Source: Stegostoma tigrinum
Lineage: Eukaryota
Direction of reading: 5' to 3'
DNA: 64,000 bases
Assembly: GCF_030684315.1 (NCBI RefSeq)
Contig: NC_081400.1
Span: 3,341,795-3,405,794, forward strand
The number at the start of each line of letters is the position of its first letter. Position 1 is the stretch's first letter. A program made the translations under genes and the position numbers. Of this stretch, positions 2,645 through 64,000 are shown one piece after another. The notes below the pieces were generated by a model. That model was not told the DNA's origin. It saw only the letters and a list, made by a program, of their open reading frames with translations, and searched no databases.

Positions 2645-2723
2645 AGAAACGATGGCTGGTTGATGACATGAATGGAATGAGCTATGTTTGTCCTCATGGG
2701 GGATCCATTTCAATAATCGTAAG
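2645..2723 (+). CDS. DERM-domain (dermatopontin/hemagglutinin-amebocyte aggregation factor-like) gene, first identified coding exon
   Basis: ttgtttcttccag| (E)KRWLVDDMNGMSYVCPHGGSISIIV ag|gtaatt; phase 1 in, phase 2 out; splices in frame (AG+C=Ser) to 10751. Confidence 0.75.
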
Positions 2724-3099
2724 GTAATTATAACCAGCAGGAGACAGATGCTGAACTGTGGAGTCAGATGAGGCTGTGGGTTAGAGTTTAATTCTTAGTT
2801 TATGAATTTAGAATCCACCATCTGTCCTGCTGGGGTTCAAGACTGTCCCCCTGCCTTTGACAAGCTGATTCTTAATTTGCACATTATTTTGATGTTTGTA
2901 TTTTACTTTTTTCAATCATTTTGTAATCGACCTGCTCAGTGAACTTATTAAGCACCTCTGAAGTTTATGGGGCTCCTACCTAGCTCGCCTGGGCCAGAGG
3001 TAGAGATACTGCCACTGCACCACTCATCAGGTTTTAAGAGCACTGCTTGAGTCCTTTTGACCCACTGTGTCATCAAACATCCATCTATTCCAAATAAAA

Positions 3100-3312
3100 T
3101 CCGAAAGGAGTATGGATGCTGTAAGTCAGAAACAAAAACAGGAATTGCTGGAAAAGTTCAGCAGGTCTGGCAGCATCTGTGGAGAGAAATCAGAGTTAAC
3201 ATTTCAGGTCAAGTTCTGAGGAAGGGTTACTCACCCTGAAACGATAACTCTGATTTCTCTTCGCAGATGCTGCCAGAACTGCTGAGTTTTTCCAGCAATT
3301 TCTATTTTTGTT
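3100..3312. mobile_element. Palindromic PLE-derived short element (aaacaaaaacagaattgctgg... family)
   Basis: Long inverted arms around a CTGAGGAAGGG...CCTGAAAC core. Confidence 0.75.
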
Positions 3313-3779
3313 CTATGTATTCTGATCCCGTTTTAAAGCTTTTGGCCTGTAGCCTCGTATGTTCATTCGCAGGACCCCGTTCTTTGCAAACAGAAAGCAC
3401 ATTTACACACACACCGCCTGTTTTGCAAAGAAAGGAACACACACACAGTCTCACCGTCATCTACTGGTTGCTTTTTAATCTGTCTCACACATAGTCTAAC
3501 CTTTATCTAGATATTTTCAAATTGAATTGCTCCGAGATGTTATTACACACCTCTGGAACAGGTGGGACTTGAACCTGGGCTTTGGTCTCAGAGGAAGGGG
3601 CACTTCCATTGTACCAACACTTCAACCCTTCTCTCAAGTTTGCCTACCTGCACTGTAATAATCAGTCTCAATGACAACTTCCAACAGAGGGAAGTCAAGG
3701 TGAGTCAGTGCACCCACATGTCTGAGGTGAAAGACTCATTATTGCAGCAGTCACCCACAAGCACAGTTTTTATTTGTTG

Positions 3780-4070
3780 ACCTGATGTGGGCATTGCTGG
3801 CTTACTTTGCATTTATTGCACATCCCTAATTGGCTGTTCAGAGTCAACCACACTGCTGTGGGCTGGAGTCATCCATAAGGATGGGTGGCAGTTTCCATTC
3901 CTAAGGAACTTTAGTGAACCAGATGGGATTTTGCAATCATCAGACTTTTAATTCAAACTATTATTGAATTCAAATTTCACCGTCTGCCATGTTGGGATTC
4001 AAGAAAGGGTTTCCGGAACATTACCTGAGAGTCTGGTTGAATTGTCCAGCAATAATGCCACTAGGCCAGC
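3780..4070 (-). mobile_element. Deu-domain (SacSINE1-like) SINE
   Basis: gagtcaaccacactgctgtgggctggagtca...tgaaccagatgg core shared with 36030-36334 and 60545-60835. Confidence 0.6.
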
Positions 4071-4789
4071 ACCTCTTCCCCCCCGCTCCGCCCATCCTCA
4101 CCTCTCACCTTCGTGTTCCTCTGTTGGGTGCTGTTATAAGCATAGACACTGACATGCACATGCATGGTCTGTTAGGTTCAGTACCTAACCCTATGCTATC
4201 CCTTACCTGGAAGTGTTTGATAGAAGACAGTGCAGAGGGAGCTTTACTCTGTACCTAAACCCATGCTATTTCTGTCCTGGGGGTGGGTGTTGGGGCACAA
4301 GTGTCCGGGAAGCTTTACTCTGTATCTAACTCTGTGCTGTCTCTGTTCTGGGAGTGATTGTCCCCCCCACCCCGCTATCAAACACTCCCAGGGACAGCAC
4401 AGGATTCATACAGAGTAAAGATTCTCTTCACTGCACCCCATCCCTGCTCCACCAGTGTAGAGAAGCTTTACTCTATATCTAACCCTGTGCTGTCCTTGTC
4501 CTGGGAGTATGTGGAGGTCATTTTCTCATTATGAGTAATGTCTGTGTAAACACAAAGGTAAATAACAATGATTCACAAACTTAAAGTAAACACACACACA
4601 GTCTCATCCATACCTCTTTCTGCTTGGTGCTGTAATAATCATTCTCTCTGTCTCTCACACAAATACACACATTTTTATTTCCCTCTGCTGAACTCTTTTA
4701 ATATCATTCACATGCATGCTTTAGCTCTTTCATCTCCCTCTGCTGGTTCCTGTAATAATAAAAATGAGAAGGTGAAAAATGCGAGGTGT

Positions 4790-6150: not shown

Positions 6151-6194
6151 GTGACTGTATGACCCTCACAAGCAGAGATTCATTCTTAACACAG

Positions 6195-6662: not shown

Positions 6663-6667
<5 letters not shown>

Positions 6668-6715: not shown

Positions 6716-6865
6716 CCCATCTCCATCTCTCTCTGCTGGGTGCTCTAATAGTAATCAGAGAGATGCACACAAACGAGCAGACTCACACACATTAACTCCC
6801 TGTTCTGAAGACTGTTATAATGTTACATATGCTCACCGACACAAACAGATATGGTCTCACCTTCA

Positions 6866-9661
6866 AGATAATAAAATGTGAGGCTGGATGAACACAGCAG
6901 GCCAAGCAGCATCTCAGGAGCACAAAAGCTGACGTTTCGGGTCTAGACCCTTCATCAGAGAGGGGGGTGGGGAGACGGAACTGGAATAAATAGGGAGAGA
7001 GGGGGAGGCGGACCGAAGATGGAGGCTAAAGAAGATAGGTGGAGAGAGTATAGGTGGGGAGGTAGGGAGGGGATAGGTCAGTCCAGGGAAGACGGACAGG
7101 TCAAGGAGGTGGGATGAGGTTAGTAGGTAGCTGGGGGTGCGGCTTGGGGTGGGAGGAAGGGATGGGTGAGAAGAAGAACCGGTTAGGGAGGCAGAGACAG
7201 GTTGGACTGGTTTTGGGATGCAGTGGTGAGGGGGAAGAGCTGGGCTGGTTGTGTGGTGCAGTGGGGGGAGGGGACGAACTGGGCTGGTTTAGGGATGCAG
7301 TCGGGGAAGGGGAGATTTTGAAACTGGTGAAGTCCACATTGATACCATATGGCTGCAGGGTTCCCAGGCGGAATATGAGTTGCTGTTCCTGCAACCTTCG
7401 GGTGGCATCATTGTGGCAGTGCAGGAGGCCCATGATGGACATGTCATCTAGAGAATGGGAGGGGGAGTGGAAATGGTTTGCAACTGGGAGGTGCAGTTGT
7501 TTGTTGCGAACTGAGCGGAGGTGTTCTGCAAAGCGGTCCCCAAGCCTCCGCTTGGTTTCCCCAATGTAGAGGAAGCCGCACTGGGTACAGTGGATGCAGT
7601 ATACCACATTGGCAGATGTGCAGGTGAACCTCTGCTTAATGTGGAATGTCATCTTTGGGCCTGGGATAGGGGTGAGGGAGGAGGTGTGGGGACAAGTGTA
7701 GCATTTCCTGCGGTTGCAGGGGAAGGTGCCGGGTGTGGTGGGGTTGGAGGGCAGTGTGGAGCGAACAAGGGAGTCACGGAGAGAGTGGTCTCTCCGGAAA
7801 GCAGACAGGGGTGGGGATGGAAAAATGTCTTGGGTGGTGGGGTCAGATTGTAAATGGCGGAAGTGTCGGAGGATGATGCGTTGTATCCGGAGGTTGGTAG
7901 GGTGGTGTGTGAGAATGAGGGGGATCCTCTTAGGGCGGTTGTGGCGGGGGCGGGGTGTGAGGGATGTGTTGCGGGAAATATGGGAGACGCGGTCAAGGGT
8001 GTTCTCGATCACTGTGGGGGGAAAGTTGCGGTCCTTAAAGAACTTGGACATCTGGGATGTGCGGGAGTGGAATGTCTTATCGTGGGAGCAGATGTGGCGG
8101 AGGCGGAGGAATTGGGAATAGGGGATGGAATTTTTGCAGGAGGGTGGGTGGGAGGAGGTGTATTCTAGGTAGCTGTGGGAGTTGGTGGGCTTGAAATGGA
8201 CATCAGTTACAAGCTGGTTGCCTGAGATGGAGACTGAGAGGTCCAGGAAGGTGAGGGATGTGCTGGAGATGGCCCAGGTGAACTGAAGGTTGGGGTGGAA
8301 GGTGTTGGTGAAGTGGATGAACTGTTCGAGCTCCTCTGGGGAGCAAGAGGCTACACTTGTCCCCACACCTCCCCCCTTACCCCTATCCCAGGCCCAAAGA
8401 TGACATTCCACATTAAGCAGAGGTTCACCTGCACATCTGCCAATGTGGTATACTGCATCCACTGTACCCGGTGCGGCTTCCTCTACATTGGGGAAACCAC
8501 ACGGAGGCTTGGGGACCGCTTTGCAGAACACCTCCGCTCAGTTCGCAACAAACAACTGCACCTCCCAGTTGCAAACCATTTCCACTCCCCCTCCCATTCT
8601 CTAGATGACATGTCCATCATGGGCCTCCTGCACTGCCACAATGATGCCACCCGAAGGTTGCAGGAACAGCAACTCATATTCCGCCTGGGAACCCTGCAGC
8701 CATATGGTATCAATGTGGACTTCACCAGTTTCAAAATCTCCCCTTCCCCCACTGCATCCCTAAACCAGCCCAGTTCGTCCCCTCCCCCCACTGCACCACA
8801 CAACCAGCCCAGCTCTTCCCCCCCACCCACTGCATCCCAAAACCAGTCCAACCTGTTTCTGCCTCCCTAACCGGTTCTTCCTCTCACCCATCCCTTCCTC
8901 CCACCCCAAGCTGCACCCCCAGCTACCTACTAACCTCATCCCACCTCCTTGACCTGTCCGTCTTCCCTGGACTGACCTATCCCCTCCCTACCTCCCCTAC
9001 CTCCCAGTTGCAAACCATTTCCACTCCCCCTCCCATTCTCTAGATGACATGTCCATCATGGGCCTCCTGCACTGCCACAATGATGCCACCCGAAGGTTGC
9101 AGGAACAGCAACTCATATTCCGCCTGGGAACCCTGCAGCCATATGGTATCAATGTGGACTTCACCAGTTTCAAAATCTCCCCTTCCCCCACTGCATCCCT
9201 AAACCAGCCCAGTTCGTCCCCTCCCCCCACTGCACCACACAACCAGCCCAGCTCTTCCCCCCCACCCACTGCATCCCAAAACCAGTCCAACCTGTTTCTG
9301 CCTCCCTAACCGGTTCTTCCTCTCACCCATCCCTTCCTCCCACCCCAAGCTGCACCCCCAGCTACCTACTAACCTCATCCCACCTCCTTGACCTGTCCGT
9401 CTTCCCTGGACTGACCTATCCCCTCCCTACCTCCCCACCTATACTCTCTCCACCTATCTTCTTTAGCCTCCATCTTTGGTCCGCCTCCCCCTCTCTCCCT
9501 ATTTATTCCAGTTCCCTCTCCCCATCCCCCTCTCTGATGAAGGGTCTAGGCCCGAAACGTCAGCTTTTGTGCTCCTGAGATGCTGCTTGGCCTGCTGTGT
9601 TCATCCAGCCTCACATTTTATTATCTTGGAATTCTCCAGCATCTGCAGTTCCCATTATCTC
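6866..9661. mobile_element. Composite Penelope-like insertion: minus copy 6866-8350, plus copy 8351-8998, tandem plus 3' repeat 8999-9661
   Basis: RT C-terminus (FLDL), PCNRRKCYTC linker (Neptune-like), GIY-YIG VVYCIHC..CGFLYIGET; 14-bp TSD TGGTCTCACCTTCA at 6852-6865 and 9662-9675. Confidence 0.93.
9534..9561 (+). ncRNA. Minimal hammerhead-ribozyme-like motif of PLE terminal repeat (also at 2527-2554 +, 6931-6958 -, 27278-27305 -, 62603-62630 +)
   Basis: CUGAUGA-A-GGGUCUAG(G/A)CCC-GAAA-CGUC: core, stem II hairpin, palindromic ACGU helix III, GUC cleavage triplet. Confidence 0.7.
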
Positions 9662-10029
9662 TGGTCTCACCTTCATCTCCCTCTGTTGGCTGCTGTTATA
9701 ACCATGCGCATGCAAACAGAACATGTAAGGTGTCACTTCAGGAGCTTTGCTCCGTGTCTAACCCTGTGCTGCCCCTGTCCTGGGAGTATTTGATGGGGTG
9801 GCAGGGTAGAGGGAGCTTTACTCTGTGTCTAACCCCATACTGCCTGTCCTGGAAGTCAATGGAGGCTATTTTTTCATTACAGAATAGCATTCTGTCAAGA
9901 GAAAGATTGCCAACTGATGGGCATGAATTTAAAGTAATTGGTGGAAAGATTGATCCGGGAATTGAAGAAAAATATTTTTGTCCAGAAGACAGTGGGGATC
10001 TGGAGCTCACAGTCCATCTGAATAGTGGA

Positions 10030-10750: not shown

Positions 10751-10939
10751 CCAGTTCAACAACAAGACCAATGAGCGAGTCTGGGACTTTGCCTGTAAGG
10801 CCACCTTCAGAGGGATCATCAACTGCAGTTGGACTGATTACGTCAACAATTTTGATGAAGGCATCAACTTCTCCTGCCCTTCTGAGGCACTGATTTGCGG
10901 GGTGGAAAATCTCCGACTTCCGAAGCACAGGGACCGGAA
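10751..10939 (+). CDS. DERM-domain gene exon (62 codons)
   Basis: ttttttcctgcaaccag| QFNNKTNERVWDFACKATFRGIINCSWTDYVNNFDEGINFSCPSEALICGVENLRLPKHRDR aa|gtaatg; DERM motifs R-x-W-x-F-x-C and W-T-x-Y-V-N-x-F-D. Confidence 0.88.
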
Positions 10940-19096: not shown

Positions 19097-19243
19097 GTGG
19101 AAGTTCTACTGCTGTGGCAAGTACACCTTGTGTTACGCAAACTGTGTGTGGACCGACTATGTGAATGAGTACAAGGAATACTTCAGCTGGCTTGTCCCAG
19201 AAGGTTTTTACCTCGTGGGGGCTGTACGTTACCATGACAGCGA
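19097..19243 (+). CDS. DERM-domain gene exon (48 codons)
   Basis: cccctag|g WKFYCCGKYTLCYANCVWTDYVNEYKEYFSWLVPEGFYLVGAVRYHDS ga|gtatgt; phase 2/2. Confidence 0.88.
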
Positions 19244-20816: not shown

Positions 20817-20877
20817 CAAACGCCGTTGGCAGTATCGATACTGTGCGATGTTTCCCACTGTCCTGCCTACCGTATGA
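20817..20877 (+). CDS. DERM-domain gene terminal exon
   Basis: tttctcttacag|c (D)KRRWQYRYCAMFPTVLPTV-TGA; completes the third R-R-W-x-Y repeat. Confidence 0.82.
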
Positions 20878-22700: not shown

Positions 22701-23329
22701 GGATAATGCAAACTAAAACTCACATTGAGTTTGTGGAAGCTTGCTGTGCAAAAATTGACTGTCAATTTACCATCATCACAACAGTGACCACAGTACAGAA
22801 AGTAACTCACTGGCAGTAAAGCACATTGGGATGAGCTGAGGTTGTGAGAGGCGCTACATCAATGCAAGCTCTCTGACTTGTTCTGAATGAGCAGTCTGCA
22901 ACTTATCAGGCATGACATCTTGAAGGACTGAGAGTGGAACTGAAAGTCAGAGCAGGACAGATAAGGAAATGTTGTTGACAGCTCCTGACCAACACTAATT
23001 TTAGAAGTTCTTCATTTTCTTTAAGCCACAAATTACTGTAAAGAAAATTGGGTTCTGATAAATATCGAGCTTGGCAAGGGCATGGAGGGAGATTTACTGG
23101 AACCAGGGATGAGGGGATTCAGTTTAAATTTCACTCTCCCTCTCTTTGCACATAAAACCTGTTCATAGATGTAAGTTTGCACATTTCAGTCTCTTTTAAG
23201 AGGCACAGATGCTTGACACGTCCTTCAGCAAAAGGTCATTAGTTTTCAGAAGAGAAAACATACATGATTTCATTGGACCATTTTAGGGGATTTTAAAAGC
23301 ACTTTCCATGAATTAAAAATGTCTTCAAG

Positions 23330-31415: not shown

Positions 31416-31438
31416 ATTTGCATTCCACTGAATAAATA
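31416..31438 (+). promoter_or_regulatory. Ig light-chain promoter: octamer and TATA-like box
   Basis: ATTTGCAT 31416-31423 in light-chain orientation; AATAAATA 31431-31438; near-octamer ATTTGCTT at 31393. Confidence 0.85.
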
Positions 31439-31563: not shown

Positions 31564-31612
31564 ATGTTTTCCATGGTGCATCTACTGTGGGCCCTGCTGC
31601 TCCATGTAACAG
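31564..31612 (+). CDS. Ig light chain leader exon
   Basis: MFSMVHLLWALLLHVT g|gtcaga; 107-nt phase-1 intron to tgtag|31720. Confidence 0.9.
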
Positions 31613-32400: not shown

Positions 32401-32439
32401 GGTTTTAGGCCGGTCCTGCCGTTGTGACGCGCCTCTGTG
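32401..32439 (-). other. J recombination signal sequence, 23-bp spacer
   Basis: GGTTTTAGG - 23 nt - CTCTGTG (CACAGAG / CCTAAAACC on the minus strand). Confidence 0.88.
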
Positions 32440-42300: not shown

Positions 42301-43935
42301 AGTTGAAGTCCCCCATGACAACTACCCTGTCTCTCTCACTCCTATCGAGAATCATCTTTGCTATCCTCTCCTCTACATCTCTGGAACTATTCGGAGGCCT
42401 ATAGAAAACTCCGAACAGGGTCACCTCTACTTTCCTGTTTCTAACCTCAGCTGCCATACTACCTCAGTTGACGAGTCCCCAAACATCCTTTCTGCAACTG
42501 GAATACTGTCCTTGACCAACAATGCCACACCTCCCCCTTTTTTACCATCTTCCCTGTTCTTACTGAAACATCTCAATCCTGGAACCTGCAACAACCATTC
42601 CTGTCCCTGCTCTGTCCACGTCTCCGAAATGGCCACAACATCGAAGTCCCAGGTACTAACCCATGCTGCAAGTTCACCCACCTTATTCCAGATGCTCATG
42701 GCGTTGAAGTGGACACACTTCAAACCAACTTCTTGCTTGCCGGTGCCATCTTGCTTCCCTGAAACTTTATTTCGGACCTGCCTACGCTCAACCTTTTCTA
42801 TACTTGAACTACAATTTTGGTTCCCATCACCCTGCTGAATTAGTTTAAACCCTCCCGAATAGGCTCAGCAAATTTCTCCCCCAGGATATCGGTACCCCTC
42901 TGGTTCAGGTGAAGACCATCCTGCTTGTAGAAGTCCCACCTACCCCAGAAAGAGCCCCATTTATCCAAGAATCCAAAACCCGCCCCCCTGCACCATCCCT
43001 GTAGCCACATGTTCAACTCTCTCTCTCTCCCTAATCCTCACCTCACTAGCACGTGACACGGGCAACAAACCAGAGACAACAACTCTGTTCGTCCTCGCTC
43101 TCAGCTTCCATCCTAGCTCCCTGAATTTCTGCCTTAAATCCCCATCTCTCTTCCTACCTATGTCGTTGGTGCTAATGTGGATCACGACTTGGGGCTACTC
43201 CCCCTCCCCCTTAAGGATTCCAAAAACACGATCAGAGACATCACGCACCCTGGCGCCTGGGAGGCAACACACCAACCGTGAGTCTCTCTTGTCCCCACAG
43301 AACCTCCTATCTGTCCCCCTAACTATGGAGTCCCCAATGACTACTGCTCTGCTCCTCTTCCCCCTTCCCTTCTGAGAAGCAGGGACAGACTCTGTGCCAG
43401 AGACCTGTGCCCCACTGCTTTCCTCTGGTAAGTCATCCCCCCCCAACAGTATCCAAAACGGTATACTTATTGTTGAGGGGAATGGCCGCAGGGGATCCCT
43501 GCACTGCCTGCCGGGTCCCTTTCCGCCCCCTGACCGTAACCCATCTGCCTTTTTCTTGTACCTGAGGAGCGACTACCTCCCTGTAACTCCTTTCAATAAC
43601 ACCCTCTGCCTCCCGAATGATCCGAAGTTCATCCAGCTCCAGCTCCAGTTCCCTAAAGCGGTTTTCAAGGAGCTGGAGTTGGGTGCACTTCCCGCAGATG
43701 TAGTCAGCCGGGACACTAGTGGTGACCCTTACATCCCACATTCTGCAGGAGGAACATTCAACTGCCCTGACCTCCATTCCCATTATTCTAAATTCCCAAA
43801 GAGACTGTTAAAAAATAAAGAATAAAAAATAAACTTGTTACCTTACCAATCAGGTGCGCAGAACATTTTTTTTTGGTTAGAGGAGGAGGATGGGTGGGAG
43901 ACACTACCCGAGTAGTGTTTCGGGTAACGCAACCT
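36344..43935 (-). mobile_element. Near full-length defective CR1 LINE (outer), split by an inner CR1
   Basis: ORF1 from 43783 (CxxC..CxxC zinc finger, leucine zipper, GDS esterase); ORF2 APE (MGDFN) and RT (FADD); frameshifts; C-terminus FFTQRV|VREWNA rejoined across the insert; possible imperfect TSD CACA(C/A)ATAT. Confidence 0.92.
36524..40060 (+). mobile_element. 5'-truncated CR1 LINE (inner), inserted antiparallel into the outer CR1
   Basis: SGNH esterase ORF1 36542-37081; APE 37291-; RT 38073-39968 with frameshift near 38100 and in-frame TAG at 39330; (TATGTTC)n tail; 7-bp TSD CTACTCT at 36517-36523 and 40061-40067. Confidence 0.95.
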
Positions 43936-44466: not shown

Positions 44467-44789
44467 GTAGTGATGATCGGAAACCATCCGTACTTCTGCT
44501 CCCACCTTCCCCAGAACAAATAGACACGGGATCAGCCACTCTGTCCTGTCTGGTGAGCCGCTTTAAGCCTGGCCTCGTGCAGGTCCTCTGGAGCGTGGAT
44601 GGGAAAGAGACAGACAGTGGGGTGACCACAAGTGCCGTGTCCCCAGAAAGTGATCAAAGCTACAGCCTGAGCAGTTACCTGACAGTCACGGCCACTGACT
44701 GGAAGAAAGGTTCCAGATATTCCTGTAGTGTGAAGCACGGATCACTGACCTCGCCTCTCCTCAACACCATCAGCTCCAGCGACTGTTAG
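44467..44789 (+). CDS. Ig light chain constant exon (type I/sigma-cart-like)
   Basis: cacacacag|gt; (S)SDDRKPSVLLLPPS..ATLSCLVSRFKPG..W..YSLSSYL..W..YSCSVKH..SSDC-TAG; in frame with J. Confidence 0.96.
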
Positions 44790-46646: not shown

Positions 46647-48245
46647 TTTAACCACATAATTCCCTCTCTCACGAAAACACACATTTACTCTTGAAAGCAA
46701 CCACACTCACAGAAGCACTTATACATGCGCAAAAAACCAAAGGCACAGATTCACACACACTCACAAGTTCTCTCCCTCTTCCATGCGCTCTGTTGTATTT
46801 CCCGGTCGAATGCACATACACCCTCTCTCCCTCTCTCTCTCACACACACATTTTCTTTCACGCACACTCACTCACAGATACACACAAACTTTTATCAACT
46901 AAACACGTTCTGTCAACATCCCCATTCTCTCACACACACTCTCTTGAAATCTCTGTCACGCACTAGCTCTCTCACATGCTCACACTTTCTCTGAAGAAAG
47001 GGACCCGGAAACACACACACTCACACTTGAACGCACGCACATGTAGAATTTCAGTTCATAATTATTCACGAATTTGCCTATCTTATACATAAACATAATA
47101 ATTCCGAGAAGGAATGACGAGAAAGTTTACGCCACCGATAAGAACCAAGACATGACTCACGAGGAGAGACTGACCAGTTCTTGTCTGCACTCATCAGTGT
47201 TTCGGCAAGTGAGAGGATAACCAGTTGAGGTGGATAAGATGCAAAAGAGGATTGATAAAATGAACGCAAAGAGGATGTTTCCTCATGTTAGGCCAACTGG
47301 AATTGTGGAACTCGCCGACGTGGATCCTGATCACGTTCAGGTCGGTCTGGGGACGGCGTCAGAGCAATTTCACCTGTTGCTGCTGTCACCGACAGAGCTT
47401 TCTGTATATGCCCAACACTGAAAGCACACGGATAAGATGGATTGCCAGGTCTGGTGGGGGTAAGATGGGGAGGGTGCGGTGGGCAGAGAGCAGGGAATCC
47501 ATTCACAATGTTTGTTATATTCACTTTCGTGGAAATTACCTGACTTGAGTTTGAAACAAATGAGGCGCACTGGGAATAATTAGCACCGTGCAGAGACGAT
47601 GCAGAGACTTTTCTGTTCATGGATTCAGAACAGAGGTTTGACATTTGCTGGAGCTGAGCAGCATTCTCATCCGTACCGCCCGGTGGCCCTGTGAGTGATA
47701 TATATAGTCATCCCAATCGCTAGGCGGCACTGTGACTGAAATATTTTCCCATCCCTGCCGCTGTTGTTGATGTGTCTGTCGTCAACGCATTCTCATTGCT
47801 GCCGTTAGGTGGCGATGCGTTATTGGAGTTCTTTCTTTGTTGAAACAGATTTTGTTGACCTGACTTATTACTGTCACATTTACCTCGACCCTGGAAAATG
47901 TTTTGTTTTTCAGGTATCTCAGGCAGAGCATACCGTACAAAGTTGATGACAGCAATAGAACGGAACGAATACTACAATGCAATGATTATAGAGAAAAGGC
48001 ATAAAGAGGGAGAAATTTAACAACAAGATGAGAAGCTGGATGAACACAGCGGGCCAAGCAACATCTTAGGAGCAGGAAAGCTGGCGTTTTGGGCCCCGAC
48101 CCTTCATCAGAAATGCCTTGTTCATTTAGCTCCACACCTTGTTATCTCGGATTGTCGAGCATCTGCAGCTGCGATTATCACTGATGCAAATTTCATAACT
48201 TGAGAGCTCCATGCAGAAGTCCAAACAGAGCAGGGTAGAAGCATT

Positions 48246-49200: not shown

Positions 49201-50037
49201 TAACACTGTGTCATTTTGAGTTAAAAAACAATAGGATTAAATTATATTAATAGAGGTCATCGTCTGCACAAGAGATCATCAATCAGTTCCAAGGCATCTG
49301 TAAGGTCTCTGCAAAATGTTCTGTCCTCGAGGAGTCCCTGGTCGAGGTGCTGCAATGATAAAACCATCAAGTATTCACGCATCAGGCATCGGAACACATG
49401 TCTGTGCTACGGACACAGTCTCTACCTCAGCGATGTGGCACTGCTGCCAGGATTCCCTGCTCTGGACATCACCATCACCAGGAATTCCAGCTCAGGTGTG
49501 GAACTGAATACTTTCCTACAGTCCCTGCATGTGCTCAAGTTCTCGCTGTTATAATGATGTCAATTATGTATATTTTCAAACCCATCGCTGGAGAAAATTT
49601 AACTGATAAATATCATCATCCCTGCTGGCTGGTGGTGTATCAAATATACATTATATCGACACAGTAATCCCTGCTGGTGTGTAGCAATGTGAGTGATATA
49701 TTTTTATGAATATATGCATACTCATCCCTGCTGCTGATGACACTGTAACTGAAACTTACTCTGATCTCTGTTGCTGGGTGAGATTTAACTGCTATATAAC
49801 ACCACCCGAACTCTCGGTGCTGCTGTGACGAACATCTCTCACTGGCCCAACTGCTGGGAGGCACTGTGATTGCAGGGTTAGAGCTGCTATATTTCTTCAG
49901 CCCACCGTCTGTGGAACACACTGAATAACGATTTTCTCCCATCACTCATCAATTACCTTACATACTGCCATAAGTCGGCCTTTGCAGGTCTGTGCTATCT
50001 CAAATCGTAATATTTGCAACTGTTTTTCCACATCCAT

Positions 50038-50326
50038 CATTTTCGGCAGAAAGACCTATGAAGGAATCTGGGACAAAAATAGAAGCTGCTGGAAAAATTG
50101 AGCTGATCTGGCAGCACCCCTCAGGAGAAATCAAAGTTAATGTTTTGGGTCCAGTGACCCTTTGTCAGAACTGGGACATCGTCTGTCAGGCCACCTTCAG
50201 AGGGATCATCAACTGCATTTGCACTCATTACACGAACAGTTCTGATGAAGGCATCAATTTTCCTGGTTTTCGGAGTTACATGTTTGCAGATTGGAAAACC
50301 TGTGTTCCCAAACAGAAGGACCATAC
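50038..50326 (+). pseudogene. DERM pseudogene exon homologous to 10751-10939, interrupted by a 95-bp insert
   Basis: CQATFRGIINCICTHYTNSSDEGINF; acceptor AG changed to AT; insert 50076-50170 with TSD CTGGGACA. Confidence 0.85.
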
Positions 50327-53755: not shown

Positions 53756-53912
53756 ACTGGGACATCGTCTGTCAGGCCACCTTCAGTGGGATCATCAACC
53801 GCAGTTGCACTCATTACATGAACAGTTTTGATGAAGGCATCAACTTTCCAGGCCTTCAGTGTTACTTGTTTGCAGATTGGAAAATCTGTGTTCCCATGCA
53901 GAAGGACCATAC
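53756..53912 (+). pseudogene. Second DERM pseudo-exon copy (5' part deleted, same insert)
   Basis: CQATFSGIINRSCTHYMNSFDEGINF. Confidence 0.85.
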
Positions 53913-55750
53913 GTACTTTTCTTCCTTCCCAAATTCCTCCCCAGAAGATTGACAGGCAAATTGTTCGAGTCCTGACACTCCTAGTTGCTCGTCGTCCCTA
54001 CCACTTGGTGGCACTGTGGTACGTGTTTATCCATTGCTGCGCTGAACGGACTCGCTTGAACCCCTGCAGTTAGTGCCGTCTGCCATTAGATGGGGCTACC
54101 GGGTCTGAAGTCCTGCAGATCACCGGACTTTGCCAAACGGTATAACTTACATCCCTTCTGCTGCATCAGCGTGAACACGAAATTTCAGCATGTCTCTCCC
54201 GTTTCGTTGTTGCTCAAGCCTCCGCCAGCGTCATCCTCTCTCTTCCCTCTCTCCCGCGTTCTCTGACTCCGACTTGCCATTTCTCCCCCTGTACTTTGTC
54301 TCTCAGTGACCTTCTGGCACACATTCCACTTGCTCACTGACATTCTGTCTCTGTCGCACATTTTATCCTTTATCCCCTCTCCCATTAGTAGCTCTCTCTC
54401 ACTCTCTCTCCGTCACTCTCCATCTCTCTACCTCCCCACCCTTCTTTACTGCCTCTATCCTTCCCTGTGTCTTTATCTTTGTCTCAGTCCTTCTCACACG
54501 CATTCTCTCTCACCGTTTATCACTCTCATTCATCTCTTTCCTTCCCCCATTTCGCTCCCTCTGTACCCTCTCCCTCTCCCACCTTTTTCCAAACCACTAG
54601 CTCCTCTCAGATATCTCTCCATCACTCTCTCTCTCTCAGAGCCTCCGCTCCCTATCACTCTCTGTCTCTTCTTTCTCTCATCTTTTCTGTTACACTCTCT
54701 CCCAAATCCCTCCCCGAACTCATTGCCTCTCTCTATCTGGCTTGCTGCAGTCCCACTCTCTTTCTTTAGTTCCAAACCTCTACATCACTCACAAGATCTC
54801 TCTTCCCCCTTCCCTCCCAATCATACCATGTTTCTTTCTTTCCATCTCTCACACTCCTCTTTGTCCAGTCACACTCTCCAAACCCCTCTATCACAGTCTG
54901 ATTCTCTCTGAAGCACACTCTCTGTCTCATCCTCTCCCACCTTGCATTTGGACCTATCCTTTCTATCTCACTGCGTTTCGGTGACTGCATTTTTCTCATA
55001 TTCAATTGCTTGACGTCATCTTCGTACTTTTCTTCTTGCACAGACGTGAAAACTGACGCCTATTTCAACCGGTGTCGCCATCAGACTCAAGTCACTGCCC
55101 TCATGACTTACCTTTTGGCCTCTATTGTACTGAGTGAGCGCAGCACTGCCAGAGGTGTCTTCTGGGAGTGAAGTTTCAACTCAGGCATAATCAACTGAGG
55201 AAGGAAGGATAAAATGTAACCCACGGTGAAGGAATATTTTCAGTATGTCTAATGTATATTGAGAACTCATATCCCTGGTTTGACCTTAGGAACTGTAGTT
55301 GGCTTCATACGAATGTCAATGTACTTGCTAAAGCTGAGGTGAAGGAGTTTTGCTCATGCACACTCTGGTTTCAATTGCAACACAGGGCTAATCAATCACT
55401 TGATCAATAATTATGGAGATTCATCTGCTTTGTGGTCATTGTGACAACTGCTGTTCAATGTGACGCAAGGATAAAAAACTCAGTCGAGGATTTCACAAAT
55501 GAAGGAAACTAATATACCCTCATTGCCCCGGGCTCAGCCTACACATGACGGCAGACCCAGACAGCGATGTGAGGAAGGGGCAACTCAGATGTAGCCTCGG
55601 AGCAAGCCAAGGTTCAATTAGGGACGATCAGTGATGCTGGGCCCAGCTGGTGGAAGTGCATTCAAAGAATGAAGTGGAGTGGGAATAAATTCTGTCAGTA
55701 GGACCTTTTTGTGCTGCCATTTCCCCCCAACCCCCACCCCCAGCACCCGG

Positions 55751-55986: not shown

Positions 55987-56904
55987 AGTTTCAAATCACA
56001 CCGTAATTATTGGTCTTGGTGCACCCACTGGCAATCTGTCTCTCTCTCTCGCTTTCTTACTTTCCAGGCCACTTAATAGAATGATAGATTTATTTTTAGA
56101 TAATAAACACTTCAAGGCAGAAAGTGGGGATATGACATTCAGGAATGGTCAGCTGGAATGCTGAACAGGCTCGGAGGGCGATATGCCTTCCTTCTGCACC
56201 TAGTTCCTGCATCATGCTCCCTGTCGCTCTCTGTTTTTTGTTCTATCTCATGGATTTGGAAGGGGCCTGGGAAATGAGGCTGGATGATGTGTTCTTTGTT
56301 TGTGTTCATCTCCAGTTGGAAATTCTTCTGCTGGAGTAAATGAACAGTGTGTAATGCTGACTGTGTGTGTACTGCCAATGTGTACATGTCCAAGGGCGAA
56401 CTTCGGCTGGCTTGTCTGGGAGAGTTTTTACCTGGTGAAATTCGCTTGTTTCCATGGCAGTGATAGTGAGTATGTATCATCCTCTCCCCCGAATGCAATC
56501 CTTTTTGATTCAACAGTTCACATTCCACTTTACTTGGCTTTCTCTTTTCTTGCAAGTACACAAAATATCTCTTTCAATTTTCCTCCCACCCATCAGCACA
56601 GTAATCTCTCACTAGACTGAAAATTATCAGTCAGCAGTTCAGCTGTGGGATCCACTACGGTGTGATTTGAAACCTCTCTCTCTCTCTCTCTCTCTCTCTC
56701 GGCCACGCTGCCGTCTGCGTGGGAAAATGACAGCTTGGGGACTTCACTGTTTCGAGCAGAAAGCACGAACAGTCTGTTCAACTGCTAGAGAAGCCAGTCT
56801 GTGGCGTAAATCTACCCTCTGCCCTTTCGTGGTTGAAGTGGTGTGCCTTCGATCACAAAGTGCGGAAATGCGGTTAATAGAAGACTTGACATCATGAATT
56901 TACT
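55751..56904. repeat. ~255-bp inverted repeat pair (55751-56005 / 56656-56904) containing (GA)n
   Basis: Arms are reverse complements, roughly 90% identical. Confidence 0.92.
56316..56469 (+). pseudogene. DERM pseudogene exon homologous to 19097-19243
   Basis: tccag|t WKFFCWSK-TGA(56341), frameshift, FGWLVWESFYLV..FHGSDS ga|gtatgt. Confidence 0.88.
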
Positions 56905-59279
56905 TAGATATGAGCATTTATTAAATAATTAAAAAAACATGAAAAAGAAAGAATAAAGAAAGCAAGAAGGTTCATAAAAGATAGAACACAGAACAGTGAA
57001 GCACAGTCCTGTACAGCACCTCTGCCTTTGCAGACTCCTTGATGGACAGTCTGGAGTCTTAGCTTGGTTCCTGTTATATTTTGCATTCCCGGTCTGAGGC
57101 GAAGAACAATGACTGGGAACAAAACACTCTCTGTTATACAGTGTAACAAACAGCAAATATAGAAAGGGCAGAAAGCTGATTGTGTCGTCTTCAACACGTA
57201 CAGAAATGTTCACAGAGCTCATTCAAGGTAATATAGCTGTCGAATAACATCATCAATTTTAGCCTCAGCCCAGACACAGTGTGCTGAGGGTTGGCATCGA
57301 TACGTTTGGAAAGGTGATGAAGATATTTTGGGTTTCATTGTGGGGTCCAAGAGCTGTTTGACCGTGGGACCCATCAACATGGCACAGTTCAATTGCTGAG
57401 AGTCAGGGTCTCATTTGTTCAGTCAGAAGGTGCTGAGGGCAGGGTGAGGGGAAGCAAGGAAGTTGACTGTGGGAGGCATCAAAATGCAGTCTGACCCTGC
57501 TCCACCACAAGCCAGGATGATGAGCAGGCAGCTTTAATTTCCTCATTGATTCAGCCATTGGCAAAGGGTGAGGGGGCAATTCTGCATCATGGTGGCATTC
57601 CTGTCCTAGGCTTGTTCCCCATTCACCAGCTCCCGGGACCCACCCACACTGACAGACCTCTCCAGAACGGAGATATTTATCACTACCTTCAAAGACACCA
57701 CCGATCTTTGGATTTATGATCCTTTTGTTCAGGGCCAATGGTGCATTGTGTCAGACAAAGAACAAAAACTCTCCTTTATTTGTGGCAATGAAATGAGGCT
57801 AAATTGGGTGATTCCCATTGCTGGCCATTTGACCTGCCCTGACTGCTTCTCAATTGACAACTTTGATGCATGACCATAGGGTTCTCCCTTTTTTAAACCC
57901 GGTTTTGGACAATGTAAATGTAATCATTTCTGAGGAAATAACACAATGTTCTGGAACTTTTCATCTTGCATTAACTCACCAGGACAGATGCAAGAATGCC
58001 AAACTTGAAATGAGCAATAATATACCCAGAATAGAGAGCAGGGTAAGCGGCATTCTTTCAGATTAAAACGTTGTTCCTTTGAAATTTGTTCTTCTTTAAT
58101 TTAACCTGATAAATGAAACATGAAAACTGTGACAGTCATGTCTCCTTTTGCGCCAAAACTGAGGTTCTGCACTGCCAAGAGATTAGATTCAACAATATAA
58201 AGGCAAGTTCGACGTTAAAAAATGCCCATTGTCTGTTTAGTCTTCCCTGTAGCTTAGTGCTATGAGATGTTACAGCATGGACACAGGCAATGAAACCAAA
58301 ACAGATTTTCTACCTTTGTATCAACAACACATGAAATTTCAAAATTCAAATACCCTCGACATTGACACCAATGGTTCCTAAACATGGTTTTTTTGAAAGA
58401 CCAACCCCACTCTTGGTGAATCATCAATGAACAGTTCGAGGCTGAATAAACGTCCACAGATTGCAGTCCAGGTGGAGGGACAGTGATAGAACTGGGCAAA
58501 GGGGACTTTAGGATGGGAAGATGACCCTGTCCAAAGAAATGAGAATGGAGCTGAATATAGTGGAAGACGAGCTCGATATTATGCTTTGCCAGAAATATGT
58601 TACGGTGGGGTTACAGATTAGTTACGCTGCACATTTTGCAAAAGATATAACGTTCAGCATCAGAGAACAGAAGGCTAGGTGGAATAGTGATTGGGGGTTG
58701 TTGGAGGGGATGGAGTCGCTGTGAAGGGGAGGAGAGGAAGATTACAGAGGGCCATGGGTCACCCTAATGTTTTGCACCCTGTGGGCCTTGCTGCCTGAAA
58801 TGGAAAGAAAACGTTTGTTTTGAGCGTGACAAATTCGATATATGATGGACTGGAACTGCAGAGTGGCGCAGCGTTGAGCCGGTGTGTTGCGATGCTGCTG
58901 GAGAGAAATTTCAAGAGTATGCATGTGACACCGCGGGGTGCTTAGACTGGTTCTCAAGATGTGGCAAAAGCAGCTCTCTGTGGAATGTTGATTGTCACGG
59001 AGATATCTATGATTCCTGGAGGATACAAAGCATGAGGAGTGAAACTTTAGTTGGAATCTATATGGGTACAGTCTGAGTGGGAGGCAGTCACTGGGGAATG
59101 TGATATTGCTGTGGAAAGGAGTTTTAGCAAATACTTGTCAAACAGGGAGAATGACAGTCGAATTAACATCGGTGGCAAGAAGAAAGATTGGAGCACAACT
59201 CCCATCAGAGAGAGGAGCGGAACTTCTTCAAGGTGTGAATGCCGTGAAGAGATGTGGCAGGGAGTAAAGTAGGGAATAA

Positions 59280-60520: not shown

Positions 60521-60544
60521 TTATGTTGCCATTCCCCCCTGCCC

Positions 60545-60835
60545 GATGGGGACTCAATGTTGTCGTGGTATTATCATTGAGCTATAAATACAAGAAACAA
60601 GCAAATGTTCTGGTTTCAAATAACTCCATGGCAGCTGAATTCAATGAAAGGAAAATTTAGAAGTGGGAAACTTGTGTAAAGCATGAACCTTTTGCTGATT
60701 GCCAGCGAAAGTCCATCTGGTTCACTCATGCCCTTTAGGAATGGCAGCTGCTATCCATGCCCAGTCTGGTCTACATGTAACTCTAGCCCCACAGCAATGT
60801 TGTTGACTGTCAATTGCCCTCTTTGGGCATAAATG
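60545..60835 (+). mobile_element. Deu-domain SINE
   Basis: ccatctggttcact..gccctttagga..ctacatgtaactc..cacagcaatgt core. Confidence 0.6.
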
Positions 60836-61119
60836 TTGCCTGAAAGCATTGGCCTCTTAACGGAAATGAGCAAAGGGAAAATAAAATCCCCCTGCCTGTC
60901 TTTGACATATAAATTGAGATATTCCTAGCTGCCATCAATTCTGATAAAGGGTCAACAGACCAGAAACGTTAACTCTGATGTTTTACTTCACAGATGCTGC
61001 CAGACGTGCTGAGCTAATACACCGTTTCTGTTTTTGTTCCTAATTAACAACATCCACAGTACTTCCAGATTTTATTCAGAACAAAGCAACTAATTGCCTG
61101 TAAAACAAGTGGGGACATG

Positions 61120-62694
61120 TAGGTTACGTGGAACAGTCCCTCTTCCGCACCTACACAGGCCCAAAACCCCACCTCTTCCTCCAGTACATTGATGACTGTA
61201 TCGGCGCCGCCTCTTGCTCCCCAGAGGAGCTCGAACAGTTCATCCACTTCACCAACACCTTCCACCCCAACCTTCAGTTCACCTGGGCCATCTCCAGCAC
61301 ATCCCTCACCTTCCTGGGCCTCTCAGTCTCCATCTCAGGAAACCAGCTTGTAACTGATGTCCATTTCAAGCCCACCGACTCCCACAGCGACCTAGAATAC
61401 ACCTCCTCCCACCCACCCTCCTGCAAAAATTCCATCCCCTATTCCCAATTCCACCGCCTCCGCCGCATCTGCTCCCACGATAAGACATTCCACTCCCGCA
61501 CATCCCAGATGTCCAAGTTCTTTAAGGACCGCAACTTTCCCCCCACGGTGATCGAGAACGCCCTTGACCGCGTCTCCCACATTTCCCGCGACACATCCCT
61601 CACACCCCGCCCCCGCCACAACCGCCCCAAGAGGATCCCCCTCGTTCTCACACACCACCCTACCAACCACCGGATACAACGCATTATCCTCCGACACTTC
61701 CGCCATTTACAATCCGACCCCACCACCCAAGACATTTTTCCATCCCCTCCCCTGTCTGCTTTCTGGAGAGACCACTCTCTCCGTGACTCCCTTGTTCGCT
61801 CCACACTGCCCTCCAACCCCACCACACCCGGCACCTTCCCCTGCAACCGCAGGAAATGCTACACTTGTCCCCACACCTCAAACCTCACCCCCATCCCAGG
61901 CACCAAGATGACATTCCACATCAAGCAGAGGTTCACCTGCACATCTGCCAATGTGGTATACTGCATCCACTGTACCCGGTGCGGCTTCCTCTACATTGGG
62001 GAAACCAAGCGGAGGCTTGGGGACCGCTTTGCAGAACACCTCCGCTCAGTTCGCAAAAAACAACTGCACCTCCCAGTCGCAAACCATTTCCACTCCCCCT
62101 CCCATTCTCTTGATGACATGTCCATCATGGGCCTCCTGCAGTGCCACAATGATGCCACCCGAAGGTTGCAGGAACAGCAACTCATATTCCGCCTGGGAAC
62201 CCTGCAGCCATATGGTATCAATGTGGACTTCACCAGTTTCAAAATCTCCCCTTCCCCTACTGCATCCCTAAACCAGCCCAGTTCATCCCCTCCCCCCACT
62301 GCACCACACAACCAGCCCAGCTCTTCCCCCCCACCCACTGCATCCCAAAACCAGTCCAACCTGTCTCTGCCTCCCTAACCGGTTCTTCCTCTCACCCATC
62401 CCTTCCTCCCACCCCAAGCCGCACCCCCAGCTACCTACTAACCTCATCCCACCTCCTTGACCTGTCCGTCTTCCCTGGACTGACCTATCCCCTCCCTACC
62501 TCCCCACCTACACTCTCTCCACCTATCTTCTTTACTGTCCATCTTCGGTCCGCCTCCCCCTCTCTCCCTATTTATTCCAGTTCCCTCCCCCCATCCCCTT
62601 CTCTGATGAAGGGTCTAGGCCCGAAACGTCAGCTTTTGTGCTCCTGAGATGCTGCTTGGCCTGCTGTGTTCGTCCAGCCTCACATTTTATTATC
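61120..62694 (+). mobile_element. Young 5'-truncated Penelope-like element with open ORF 61128-62378 (RT C-half plus GIY-YIG)
   Basis: YIDD motif, Cys linker, GIY-YIG; 9-bp TSD GGGGACATG at 61111-61119 and 62695-62703; hammerhead motif 62603-62630. Confidence 0.95.
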
Positions 62695-62703
62695 GGGGAC
62701 ATG

Positions 62704-64000
62704 CTGAGTTGGTGAAAGGTGTTATGCCAATGCAATTTCTCTGACTTGTTCTGACTGAACTGTCGGCAACTCATCAGGCATGACATCATGAAGGACTGAG
62801 AGCAGAACTGAAAGTCAGAGTTGGACCTGATAAAGCAATTTTGTTGATTGCTCCTTTTCAACACTGATTTAAGAAGCTATTCATGTTCTTTAATTAATAA
62901 GTTTCCATATAGACAATCGTTTGCATTTATATATACCTTGTAATGAAGATATGGAGGGAAATTTACTGGAATGTGAACAGGGATGAAGTGCTTCAGTTTA
63001 AATTTTGCCCTCTCCCACCTTGCTCTTCAAACCGTTTAAGTTCATAACATTTGAAATTTCAATCTGCATCCAGATACACAGATGTTTGATGTGCCCTTTA
63101 ACAAGAGGCTAATAGTTCTCAGAACAGAACAACAGATATGATTTCGCTGAAGAATTTTCAGGGTTTATAAAGACATGTTCTATCAATCAGACACTTCTTT
63201 AAGAATGGAGGAATGTATCAAGATAGGGACAGTTAATGGGGCTGCAGGAGGTGAAAGAAATAGTGAGGCATGCAGGAGCTGGGGGAGGTTACAGAGATAG
63301 GCAGTGACGTATGTGCTGGAGGTAACAGTTTGGGAAGTTTGGAGAGGCTGTATAAGGTTGCAGACAGTGTAAATACCCCCACTACATTAGGTAACAGAGA
63401 TAGGGAGCAATGCAGCAGCTAGAGTATGTTACAGAGATAGTGCAGAGATTCGGGACTGTATGAAGTACAGAGGTAGACTCATGGGTTTTTGCAAACCCGA
63501 AGCAGACCCTTTGGCCTATCGTATCCAGTTCCGCTAAATTTATCTCATTCTGGTTGCCAGCAGTTGACCCATATCCCCGTTAAGCCTTCCGATTCATGTG
63601 CACGATCACTGCCACTTTCTTTGGCAGGTCGGTCCACAGAAGCACCACCATCTGTGTGAAAACGTTAAATCTCAGGTCCCTTTTAAATCTTCTGCTCTCA
63701 CGTTGTTAGTATCTCCTACACTGGGAAAATAAGACCTTTACTGTTCATCCTATCCATGCCTCCTATGATTTTATACACTTTTCTCAGATCACCTCTCACC
63801 TCTGACACTCCAGTCAGGAAAGCCCGAGCCTATTCAGCTTCCCCCAACAGCTTAAACCCTCGAAGTGGGACAACATGCTGGTGAATCTCTTCTCAAACAT
63901 TTCGAATAGAACAACATATTTCTCACCGCAGGTAAAACAAAACTGAATGCAGTTTTCTTCAAGTGGCCCAAAAGATGTGCTGTAAAGATGCAAAATGACA
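62704..64000 (+). repeat. Paralogous copy of the 22835-24200 spacer
   Basis: Collinear unique sequence (atcaggcatgacatc.tgaaggactgagag..gaactgaaagtcagag), then satellite, then the same CR1 fragment. Confidence 0.88.

What the first reader, a model, noticed from the sequence alone, without database searches (positions are those of the whole stretch)
2645..64000. Innate-type DERM (agglutinin-like) gene and Ig light-chain cluster appear to form a co-duplicated ~40-kb cassette
Seen: the order is intact DERM gene (2645-20906), spacer (22835-24200...), IgL L-V-J-C (31564-44789), decayed DERM paralog (50038-56469), then a second copy of the same spacer (62704-64000). Intronic homology supports this: 10950-11250~50350-50620, 18120-19370~55070-56630 and 19430-19620~58230-58440. 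The offset is about 40 kb. Established: shark IgL genes occur as multiple V-J-C clusters, and DERM-family proteins include the horseshoe-crab hemagglutinin/amebocyte aggregation factor. Inference: the unit that amplified this IgL isotype carried a DERM gene, linking an innate-type agglutinin-like family to a rearranging receptor and possibly to shared B-cell enhancers. This predicts another IgL cluster about 7 kb past the window end and possibly a C exon upstream of the window.
Basis: partly seen in the sequence, partly recalled or inferred. Interest (0 to 1): 0.8.

Follow-up and report, generated by a model that had tools for sequence, protein, structure and literature searches.

The report
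Shark light-chain cluster between duplicated DERM genes
A shark antibody light-chain gene cluster lies between a working lectin-like DERM gene and an old, dead copy of that gene, most simply the trace of one ancient tandem duplication of about 39 kb, an ordinary way for such gene arrays to grow.

Summary
The window has four intact exons of a DERM-family gene (2645-20877; the signal-peptide exon was not found). It has one complete type I (sigma-2/sigma-cart) IgL cluster (31564-44789). It also has a dead DERM copy (49961-58433) and two copies of a downstream spacer (22828-24200, 62696-64000).

Homologous blocks run in one order and orientation, with offsets of 36.9-39.9 kb and K2P 0.29-0.54, so the duplication is old. 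The N gap (34007-34200) lies in the J-C intron. It breaks no reading frame, but no read contig bridged it.

New evidence on linkage: in 8 of 8 elasmobranch species that have both proteins, this DERM gene and the type I IgL proteins sit on contigs of identical length. Each species shows only one such DERM gene against up to 8 IgL entries, so DERM did not multiply with the isotype as an intact gene.

Whether the IgL cluster was inside the duplicated unit cannot be read from the window. Two unchecked first-stage notes place the next Ig cluster about 4.9 kb past the window end, which fits a single tandem duplication. No RNA run was available.

Verdict: a real, ordinary segmental duplication plus a new synteny marker. 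The claims about agglutinin function and shared enhancers are untested.

The parts
2645..2723 (+). DERM-A coding exon (residues ~24-50 of orthologue P0001); first exon found in the window. The signal-peptide exon was not found.
   Evidence: tblastn 85% to P0001; AG acceptor and GT donor
10751..10939 (+). DERM-A coding exon (residues ~50-114)
   Evidence: 94% to P0001; Pfam DERM 46.2 bits; 26 of 26 family-invariant residues kept
19097..19243 (+). DERM-A coding exon (residues ~114-163)
   Evidence: 86% to P0001; Pfam DERM 34.6 bits; 17 of 17 invariant residues kept
20817..20877 (+). DERM-A last coding exon with stop codon; AATAAA at 20901-20906
6864..9662 (.). Young Penelope-like element copies (inverted and tandem) inside a DERM-A intron
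   Evidence: 97-99.8% self-matches; weak GIY-YIG hit, 19 bits, below Pfam's cut-off
22828..24200 (+). Spacer copy 1, downstream flank of DERM-A
   Evidence: 71-76% identical to 62696-64000, K2P 0.29-0.36
31416..31423 (+). Octamer ATTTGCAT 141 bp upstream of the leader ATG, followed by an AATAAATAG box
   Evidence: The motif alone is not above chance in the window (4 found, 3.2 expected); its position is what counts.
31564..31612 (+). IgL leader exon
   Evidence: 17 of 17 residues identical to Stegostoma P0012; GT donor
31720..32045 (+). IgL V exon, type I / sigma-2
   Evidence: Pfam V-set 56.4 bits; 88% to P0012 and 66% to skate 'type I' P0032
32046..32073 (+). V recombination signal: CACAGTG, 12-nt spacer, ACACTAACC
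   Evidence: read from the sequence
32401..32439 (+). J recombination signal: GGTTTTAGG, 23-nt spacer, CTCTGTG
   Evidence: read from the sequence
32440..32477 (+). J segment (YTFGGGTALTVR) with GTAAGT donor
34007..34200 (.). Assembly gap in the J-C intron, inside a degenerate repeat region (33073-35589)
   Evidence: not bridged by any listed contig piece
36520..39968 (+). LINE (GDSL esterase-like ORF, endonuclease, reverse transcriptase) in the J-C intron
   Evidence: Pfam
40047..43446 (-). Second LINE of the same family in opposite orientation, 69.5% identical to the first
44467..44789 (+). IgL C exon with TAG stop
   Evidence: Pfam C1-set 88.6 bits; 98% to P0012; AG acceptor in phase with J
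47252..47287 (+). Possible relic of the DERM exon at 2645-2723 (weak)
   Evidence: 29 of 39 nt identical, score 17 against a shuffle maximum of 14-16; best place in the window, next best 14
49961..50074 (+). Left-most detectable homology of unit 2 to unit 1 (10673-10787)
   Evidence: 68.7% identity, E 6e-11. No homology detected to the left of it.
50073..50172 (.). Short dispersed repeat inserted in unit 2 after the duplication. The flanking alignments overlap by 7 nt of unit 1 (10781-10787).
50172..50324 (+). Dead DERM copy, exon-3-like piece a
   Evidence: tblastn E 8e-11; 4 of 13 invariant residues lost
53758..53916 (+). Dead DERM copy, exon-3-like piece b, from the local duplication of 47826-51420 onto 52199-55018
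   Evidence: K2P 0.14-0.16. It shares 4 lost residues with piece a.
56317..56470 (+). Dead DERM copy, exon-4-like piece with a stop and a frameshift
   Evidence: K2P 0.41 to 19095-19244
58240..58433 (+). Homologue of DERM-A intron sequence 19440-19610
   Evidence: score 39 against a shuffle maximum of 16-17
60958..62694 (.). Young Penelope-like element copy directly before spacer copy 2
   Evidence: 97% identical to 6867-8351; GIY-YIG 20.7 bits, below cut-off
62696..64000 (+). Spacer copy 2; runs to the window end

Best explanation
A single-copy DERM-family gene of the 'hemagglutinin/amebocyte aggregation factor-like' group (here called DERM-A) is an old chromosomal neighbour of the type I (sigma-2/sigma-cart) IgL minicluster array in sharks and rays. 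In this shark, one ancient tandem segmental duplication copied a unit of about 39 kb. The unit ran from inside the DERM-A gene, or a little upstream of it, through DERM-A's 3' exons, the 3' flank ('spacer') and one complete IgL cluster, to about 5 kb past the C exon.

The upstream DERM-A copy stayed functional. The downstream copy lacked its 5' part or its promoter, decayed neutrally, and was later partly re-duplicated and invaded by mobile elements.

Shown: the co-linear homology, its age, the intact and dead states of the two copies, and the same-contig linkage in 8 species. Inferred: that the IgL cluster was inside the unit and has a sister cluster just beyond the window, and that DERM-A marks an edge of the array.
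For: - Homologous blocks lie in one order and orientation: 10673-11224, 11583-11962, 17935-19450, 19440-19610 and 22828-24200 match 49961-50611, 50809-51192, 54876-56692, 58240-58433 and 62696-64000. E-values go down to 2e-98.
- Divergence is similar across blocks, K2P 0.29-0.54, which fits one event.
- The dead copy's exon has diverged like intron sequence (0.41). It has lost invariant residues and carries a stop and a frameshift. DERM-A keeps 43 of 43 invariant residues.
- No homology was detected left of 10673/49961, which fits a breakpoint inside the gene.
- Exactly one complete, same-strand IgL cluster lies between the copies.
- In 8 of 8 species with both proteins, DERM-A and all 22 type-I-like IgL entries lie on contigs of identical length, 6.0 to 252 Mb. 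The second DERM group lies on other contigs.
- Unchecked notes place the next Ig cluster 4856 nt past the window end and speak of 'successive Ig clusters' at +13.1 kb. In unit 1 the corresponding distance from the spacer to the leader intron is 7.4 kb.
Against: - The sister IgL cluster lies outside the window. I could not read it, so its existence, orientation and divergence rest on unchecked AI notes.
- The left breakpoint is uncertain. A weak exon-2-like match at 47252-47287 would move it upstream.
- About 3.2 kb of unit 1, including the last DERM exon (19611-22827), has no detectable partner in unit 2.
- The unit length includes an unbridged assembly gap.
- Same-contig linkage is not adjacency.
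Confidence: 0.6

Rival explanations
1. Only the DERM gene (or its 3' part) and its flank were duplicated. The IgL cluster between the copies was already there, or moved in later by a separate cluster duplication, so there is no DERM-plus-IgL unit.
For: Within the window only DERM and spacer sequence is seen twice. Shark IgL clusters are known to multiply as small V-J-C units (passages of PMC12227049). The offsets vary from 36.9 to 39.9 kb.
Against: Two same-strand copies 39 kb apart with one cluster between them are most simply explained by a tandem unit. Unchecked notes report another Ig cluster right after spacer copy 2, at a similar distance as in unit 1. Under this rival that would be a coincidence.
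Confidence: 0.25
2. One reading: the repeat unit that amplified the whole type I isotype carried a DERM gene. DERM copies or relics would then sit beside most type I clusters, and the two gene types would share regulation.
For: Same-contig linkage in 8 of 8 species. One DERM relic does sit beside a cluster here.
Against: There is one DERM-A protein per species in both searches: 11 of 15 and 15 of 1690 candidates passed, and no species had two group-A loci. Heterodontus, by contrast, shows 8 type I IgL entries on one contig. No other note in this genome mentions DERM, and another unit 128 kb away is described as IgL plus a receptor gene. Dead relics would be invisible to protein searches, so this is not excluded.
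Confidence: 0.1
3. The similarity is due to shared mobile elements or chance, not to a duplication of the locus.
For: The window is full of repeats: Penelope-like elements, LINEs, a short dispersed repeat and a 37-nt minisatellite.
Against: The matching blocks include DERM exon sequence and unique intron sequence. Apart from the later local duplication inside unit 2 (10781-11224 also matches 53757-54197), the non-minisatellite blocks match once each. They keep order and strand, and they score far above shuffles, z 19 to 88.
Confidence: 0.02

Closest known systems
Type I (sigma-cart / sigma-2) immunoglobulin light-chain miniclusters of sharks and skates (horn shark and little skate type I genes)
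   Same: One V, one J and one C per cluster. V and J lie 0.39 kb apart with 12/23 recombination signals. The best named relatives are 'type I immunoglobulin light chain [Leucoraja erinacea]' (P0032) and the horn shark light chain P0029. The isotype's clusters lie together on one contig. The passages I read of PMC12227049 say the same for each isotype.
   Different: The J-C intron is about 12 kb, swollen by two LINEs, a repeat region and an assembly gap. That typical clusters are much shorter is my recollection, not a call.
Hemagglutinin/amebocyte aggregation factor of the horseshoe crab, and the DERM (dermatopontin) family, Pfam PF14704
   Same: The DERM domain is found in the exons and in orthologue P0001 (120 bits). 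NCBI names all orthologues 'hemagglutinin/amebocyte aggregation factor-like'.
   Different: The name is automatic, and no activity is known for any vertebrate member that I saw. The shark group A is its own clade (support 100/99), separate from a second shark/ray group and from lamprey, hagfish, amphibian and teleost members. I did not compare it directly with vertebrate dermatopontin or with the horseshoe crab protein.
Tandem segmental duplications that carry a truncated neighbour gene. In this same genome, an 'IgL cluster + receptor gene' unit is described in note s1-882143.
   Same: An IgL cluster with a dead second copy of the neighbouring gene next to it (unchecked note).
   Different: The neighbour here is a DERM-family gene, not an Ig-like receptor. 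The event is old (K2P about 0.4).

Membership tests
DERM family (Pfam PF14704) | Match to the family profile above Pfam's gathering score | tested here: met
   46.2 and 34.6 bits on two separate exon ORFs against a cut-off of 28.3; orthologue P0001 scores 120.4 bits
DERM family (Pfam PF14704) | Conserved cysteines and aromatic residues of the repeats | tested here: met
   43 of 43 columns invariant among 10 elasmobranch orthologues are kept in the two large exons
DERM family (Pfam PF14704) | Secreted protein with a signal peptide | tested here: inconclusive
   No signal-peptide exon was found in 1-2640. It may lie upstream of the window.
Hemagglutinin/amebocyte aggregation factor (functional agglutinin) | Cell-aggregating or hemagglutinating activity | not testable with these tools
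   Only automatic names support this
Type I (sigma-2/sigma-cart) IgL minicluster | V-set and C1-set exons closest to named type I light chains | tested here: met
   Pfam; hits named type I (skate) and the horn shark light chain
Type I (sigma-2/sigma-cart) IgL minicluster | Unjoined V and J with paired 12- and 23-spacer recombination signals, and an in-phase J-C splice | tested here: met
   Read from the sequence
Type I (sigma-2/sigma-cart) IgL minicluster | Rearranged and expressed | not testable with these tools
   None of the 4 runs found is RNA
Tandem segmental duplication containing DERM plus IgL (the 'cassette') | Co-linear, same-strand homology of similar divergence | tested here: met
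Tandem segmental duplication containing DERM plus IgL (the 'cassette') | A second IgL cluster at the matching place in copy 2, with homologous flanks | not testable with these tools
   It lies beyond the window; only unchecked notes s1-882413 and s1-882371 speak of it
Tandem segmental duplication containing DERM plus IgL (the 'cassette') | A defined junction between the copies | tested here: inconclusive
   Homology stops at 10673/49961, but a weak exon-2-like match at 47252 would place the junction further left
Isotype-wide DERM-plus-IgL amplification unit | DERM copies as numerous as IgL clusters | tested here: not met
   For intact genes: one group-A DERM per species against up to 8 IgL entries on the same contig. 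Dead relics were not testable.

The most novel reading that the evidence does not exclude
The DERM-A gene has been the immediate neighbour of type I IgL clusters since before sharks and rays split. It lies inside their B-cell regulatory domain, so a secreted lectin-like protein is co-expressed with a rearranging light chain. Dead DERM relics beside clusters would then record the order in which the array grew.
Probability: 0.1. Interest if true: 0.65.

Novelty: new member of a known kind. Interest (0 to 1): 0.35.

Why it matters
[quoted passage not shown] A dead copy of a neighbouring gene dates one duplication step in such an array and gives its extent.

The same-contig linkage of one DERM-family gene with type I light chains in eight sharks and rays offers a simple marker. 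It could be used to find and compare this light-chain locus across cartilaginous fishes. My paper searches and the term search inside PMC12227049 found no report of this linkage.

None of this shows a functional tie between the lectin-like gene and antibodies.

Tried and rejected
- **Genomic context of the DERM orthologues.** How close DERM-A lies to the IgL clusters in other species therefore stayed unchecked.
- **Expression.** The look-up of sequencing runs listed 4 runs from one study, none of them RNA. DERM-A expression, co-expression with IgL and V-J rearrangement could not be tested.
- **Bridging the gap.** The laid records were short contigs and none of the listed pieces spans the gap.
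- **Signal-peptide exon.** Not found by tblastn or by a pattern scan.
- **Homology left of 10673/49961, and for the last DERM exon.** None above shuffles, apart from one weak exon-2-like match.
- **CTCF-like motif array downstream of C**, to mirror note s1-882371. There were 3 matches in the window and none in 44790-49960, so this was uninformative.
- **Tandem Repeats Finder around the gap.** It found only a CA repeat and a 36-nt repeat. The larger degenerate repeats show up only in the self-BLAST.
- **Spliced model.** The exons were searched one by one or mapped with fetched proteins. The joined model was neither built nor searched.
- **Supplements.** Table S1 of PMC12227049 may list IgL coordinates and neighbouring genes. 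Supplements are closed and I did not see it.
- **Rejected idea.** That the 556-residue top hit P0071 might be an Ig-DERM fusion model. By eye its sequence shows two DERM-like stretches around a metalloprotease-like HExxH motif, and it comes from a teleost. I did not scan it against Pfam.

Full report
**What the window holds.** The window has one N run, 34007-34200. A self-comparison (90 matches of at least 100 nt at E <= 1e-10) and a more sensitive comparison of 1-31500 against 44800-64000 show many mobile-element matches. They also show one co-linear, same-strand chain:
- 10673-10787 with 49961-50074
- 10781-11224 with 50171-50611
- 11583-11962 with 50809-51192
- 17935-18175 with 54876-55109
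- 18614-18778 with 55552-55715
- 18826-19450 with 56041-56692
- 22828-24200 with 62696-64000

A direct Smith-Waterman test adds 19440-19610 with 58240-58433 (score 39, shuffle maximum 16-17). Offsets are 36.9-39.9 kb.

**The assembly gap, tested first.**
- The gap lies in the J-C intron, 1.5 kb after J (32440-32477) and 10.3 kb before C (44467-44789). No reading frame crosses it.
- Degenerate repeats of one family lie on both sides: 33073-33842 matches 34585-35383 at 70-77%.
- V, J and C all find the same best paralogue, P0012: leader 17 of 17 residues, V 88%, J 11 of 11, C 98%. That fits one cluster.
- Short contigs of four runs, from at most two samples of one study, were laid on 31200-37199. 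None of the 32 listed pieces bridges the gap (29,439 more were not shown), and depth in the bin 34000-34199 is 0 to 0.87.
- Continuity is therefore plausible but unproven. The 39-kb spacing carries the uncertainty of the gap's length.

**The DERM gene.**
- Proteins found with the large exon ORF (11 of 15 candidates passed) are all named 'hemagglutinin/amebocyte aggregation factor-like' by NCBI and carry Pfam DERM.
- Mapping them on the window and reading the splice sites gives exons at 2645-2723, 10751-10939, 19097-19243 and 20817-20877. All have AG/GT sites and consistent phases, with a stop at 20875-20877 and AATAAA at 20901.
- The two large exons pass Pfam's cut-off on their own. They keep 43 of 43 residues that are invariant among ten orthologues.
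- The exon for residues 1-23 (signal peptide) was not found in 1-2640, so the gene probably begins upstream of the window.
- No zebra-shark protein of this group appeared. If the window is zebra shark, the gene seems unannotated there. I take the species from other agents' notes and from the nearest IgL proteins being Stegostoma's.

**The light-chain cluster.** The parts are:
- octamer ATTTGCAT at 31416-31423, followed by an AATAAATAG box
- leader 31564-31612
- V 31720-32045
- CACAGTG, 12-nt spacer, ACACTAACC
- 0.39 kb further on, GGTTTTAGG, 23-nt spacer, CTCTGTG
- J 32440-32477 with a GTAAGT donor
- C 44467-44789, spliced in phase

Among the named relatives are a skate 'type I' light chain and the horn shark light chain, so this is the type I / sigma-cart / sigma-2 isotype. 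It is the only IgL sequence in the window. The J-C intron holds the gap, a repeat region and two LINEs in opposite orientation.

**The dead copy.**
- Unit 2 has an exon-3-like piece at 50172-50324 and an exon-4-like piece at 56317-56470 with a stop and a frameshift. It has no counterpart of the last exon.
- It has at most a weak trace of the exon at 2645-2723: 47252-47287, 29 of 39 nt identical, z about 4-5.
- A later local duplication, 47826-51420 onto 52199-55018 (K2P 0.14-0.16), made a second exon-3-like piece at 53758-53916. That piece shares four lost invariant residues with the first, so the gene was already dead by then.
- K2P between the units is 0.29-0.54. The exon-4-like piece (0.41) is no better kept than the introns, so the copy has drifted since it arose.
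- Homology stops at 10673/49961, about 80 nt before the exon. Nothing to the left aligns. The simplest reading is a breakpoint inside the gene, so the copy was dead on arrival. The weak match at 47252 leaves a more complete original copy possible.

**Linkage in other species.**
- print the length of the contig that carries each protein.
- In all 8 species that have both a group-A DERM protein and type-I-like IgL proteins, the lengths are identical:
  - Hemiscyllium ocellatum, 11,707,562
  - Chiloscyllium plagiosum, 27,915,349
  - Heterodontus francisci, 22,062,530
  - Pristis pectinata, 9,426,723
  - Mobula hypostoma, 252,427,829
  - Heptranchias perlo, 8,645,015
  - Hypanus sabinus, 169,660,532
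  - Carcharodon carcharias, 6,011,626
- All 22 IgL entries of those species are on that contig.
- Three further species have a DERM-A protein but no IgL hit to compare: Mustelus, Scyliorhinus torazame and Pristiophorus.
- A second DERM group (about 45% identity) lies on other contigs, including in Stegostoma.
- In a tree of 24 proteins, group A is one clade (support 100/99) and group B another (99/99). Deeper forks are weak and the root is arbitrary. I left out partial or isoform rows (P0002, P0005, P0070), the remaining members of the listed clusters, and the other search hits.
- So the linkage is old and specific to group A. It is, however, linkage on a contig of 6 to 252 Mb, not shown adjacency.

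**Was the IgL cluster part of the unit?**
- The window cannot tell, because the partner of everything after 24200 lies beyond position 64000.
- Two first-stage notes, unchecked, place a leader-V intron of an Ig cluster 4856 nt past the window end and speak of 'successive Ig clusters' at +13.1 kb. In unit 1 the leader intron lies 7.4 kb after the matching point. The difference is easily explained by the minisatellite and element insertions in 24300-29500.
- If those notes are right, a single tandem duplication of about 39 kb that included the cluster is much the simplest account. I give it 0.6.
- The wider claim, that the isotype's amplification unit carried DERM, fits poorly. Each species shows one DERM-A gene against up to 8 IgL entries, the word DERM appears in no other note on this genome, and a different unit is described 128 kb away. 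Protein searches cannot see dead relics, so I leave it at 0.1.

**What is known in print.**
- Searches for 'amebocyte aggregation factor' with 'shark' (1 paper, a comparison of bilaterian immune cells; listing only) and for 'dermatopontin' with 'immunoglobulin light chain' and 'shark' (1 unrelated paper; listing only) found nothing on this linkage.
- The listings from two broader searches on shark light-chain clusters showed nothing on it either.
- In PMC12227049 I read passages only. [quoted passage not shown] The word dermatopontin occurs 0 times in its main text. Its table S1 was not visible to me.

**Verdict.** The structure is real. It is an ordinary product of segmental duplication in a minicluster array, with one modestly new point: the conserved DERM-A / type I IgL linkage. 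The functional ideas (agglutinin activity, shared enhancers) have no support yet.

Noticed in passing
window 36520-39968 (+) and 40047-43446 (-): Two LINEs of one family (GDSL-esterase-like ORF, endonuclease, reverse transcriptase) lie tail to tail in the J-C intron. They form a 3.4-kb inverted repeat of 69.5% identity inside an otherwise intact IgL cluster.
   Followed up: partly
window 6864-9662 and 60958-62694: Very young Penelope-like element copies, 97-99.8% identical. The first is arranged as inverted plus tandem partial copies inside a DERM-A intron. Fragments of their ends are scattered across the window (27173-27400, 48020-48650, 13652-13787, 15246-15344, 19998-20100).
   Followed up: partly
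window 55751-56005 and 56656-56904: A 255-nt inverted repeat of 93% identity brackets the dead exon-4-like piece. I saw no other copy in the window.
   Followed up: no
window 352-1566, 23345-25430, 27955-29456, 63206-63476: Several arrays of a degenerate CT-rich minisatellite, whose match offsets step by 37 nt. They lie upstream of DERM-A, in and after both spacers, and upstream of the V promoter.
   Followed up: no
window 31403-33026: Contigs from the four DNA runs differ from the window at many places around V and J. For example, 31953 G>A is seen in all four runs, and there are blocks of changes at 32081-32194 and at 32286-32328. These may be alleles or near-identical paralogous clusters.
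   Followed up: no
P0014 (Stegostoma tigrinum IgL protein): This annotated paralogue reads three codons into the leader intron (GQKF; the window has GQKL at the same place). It ends its V region with the same residues as the window's V. That fits note s1-882413, which says neighbouring clusters lost the normal leader-V acceptor.
   Followed up: no
P0071 (teleost Polymixia lowei): The best non-shark hit is a 556-residue protein with DERM matches at both ends (2 matched stretches). By eye it has a metalloprotease-like HExxH motif between them. I did not scan it against Pfam.
   Followed up: no
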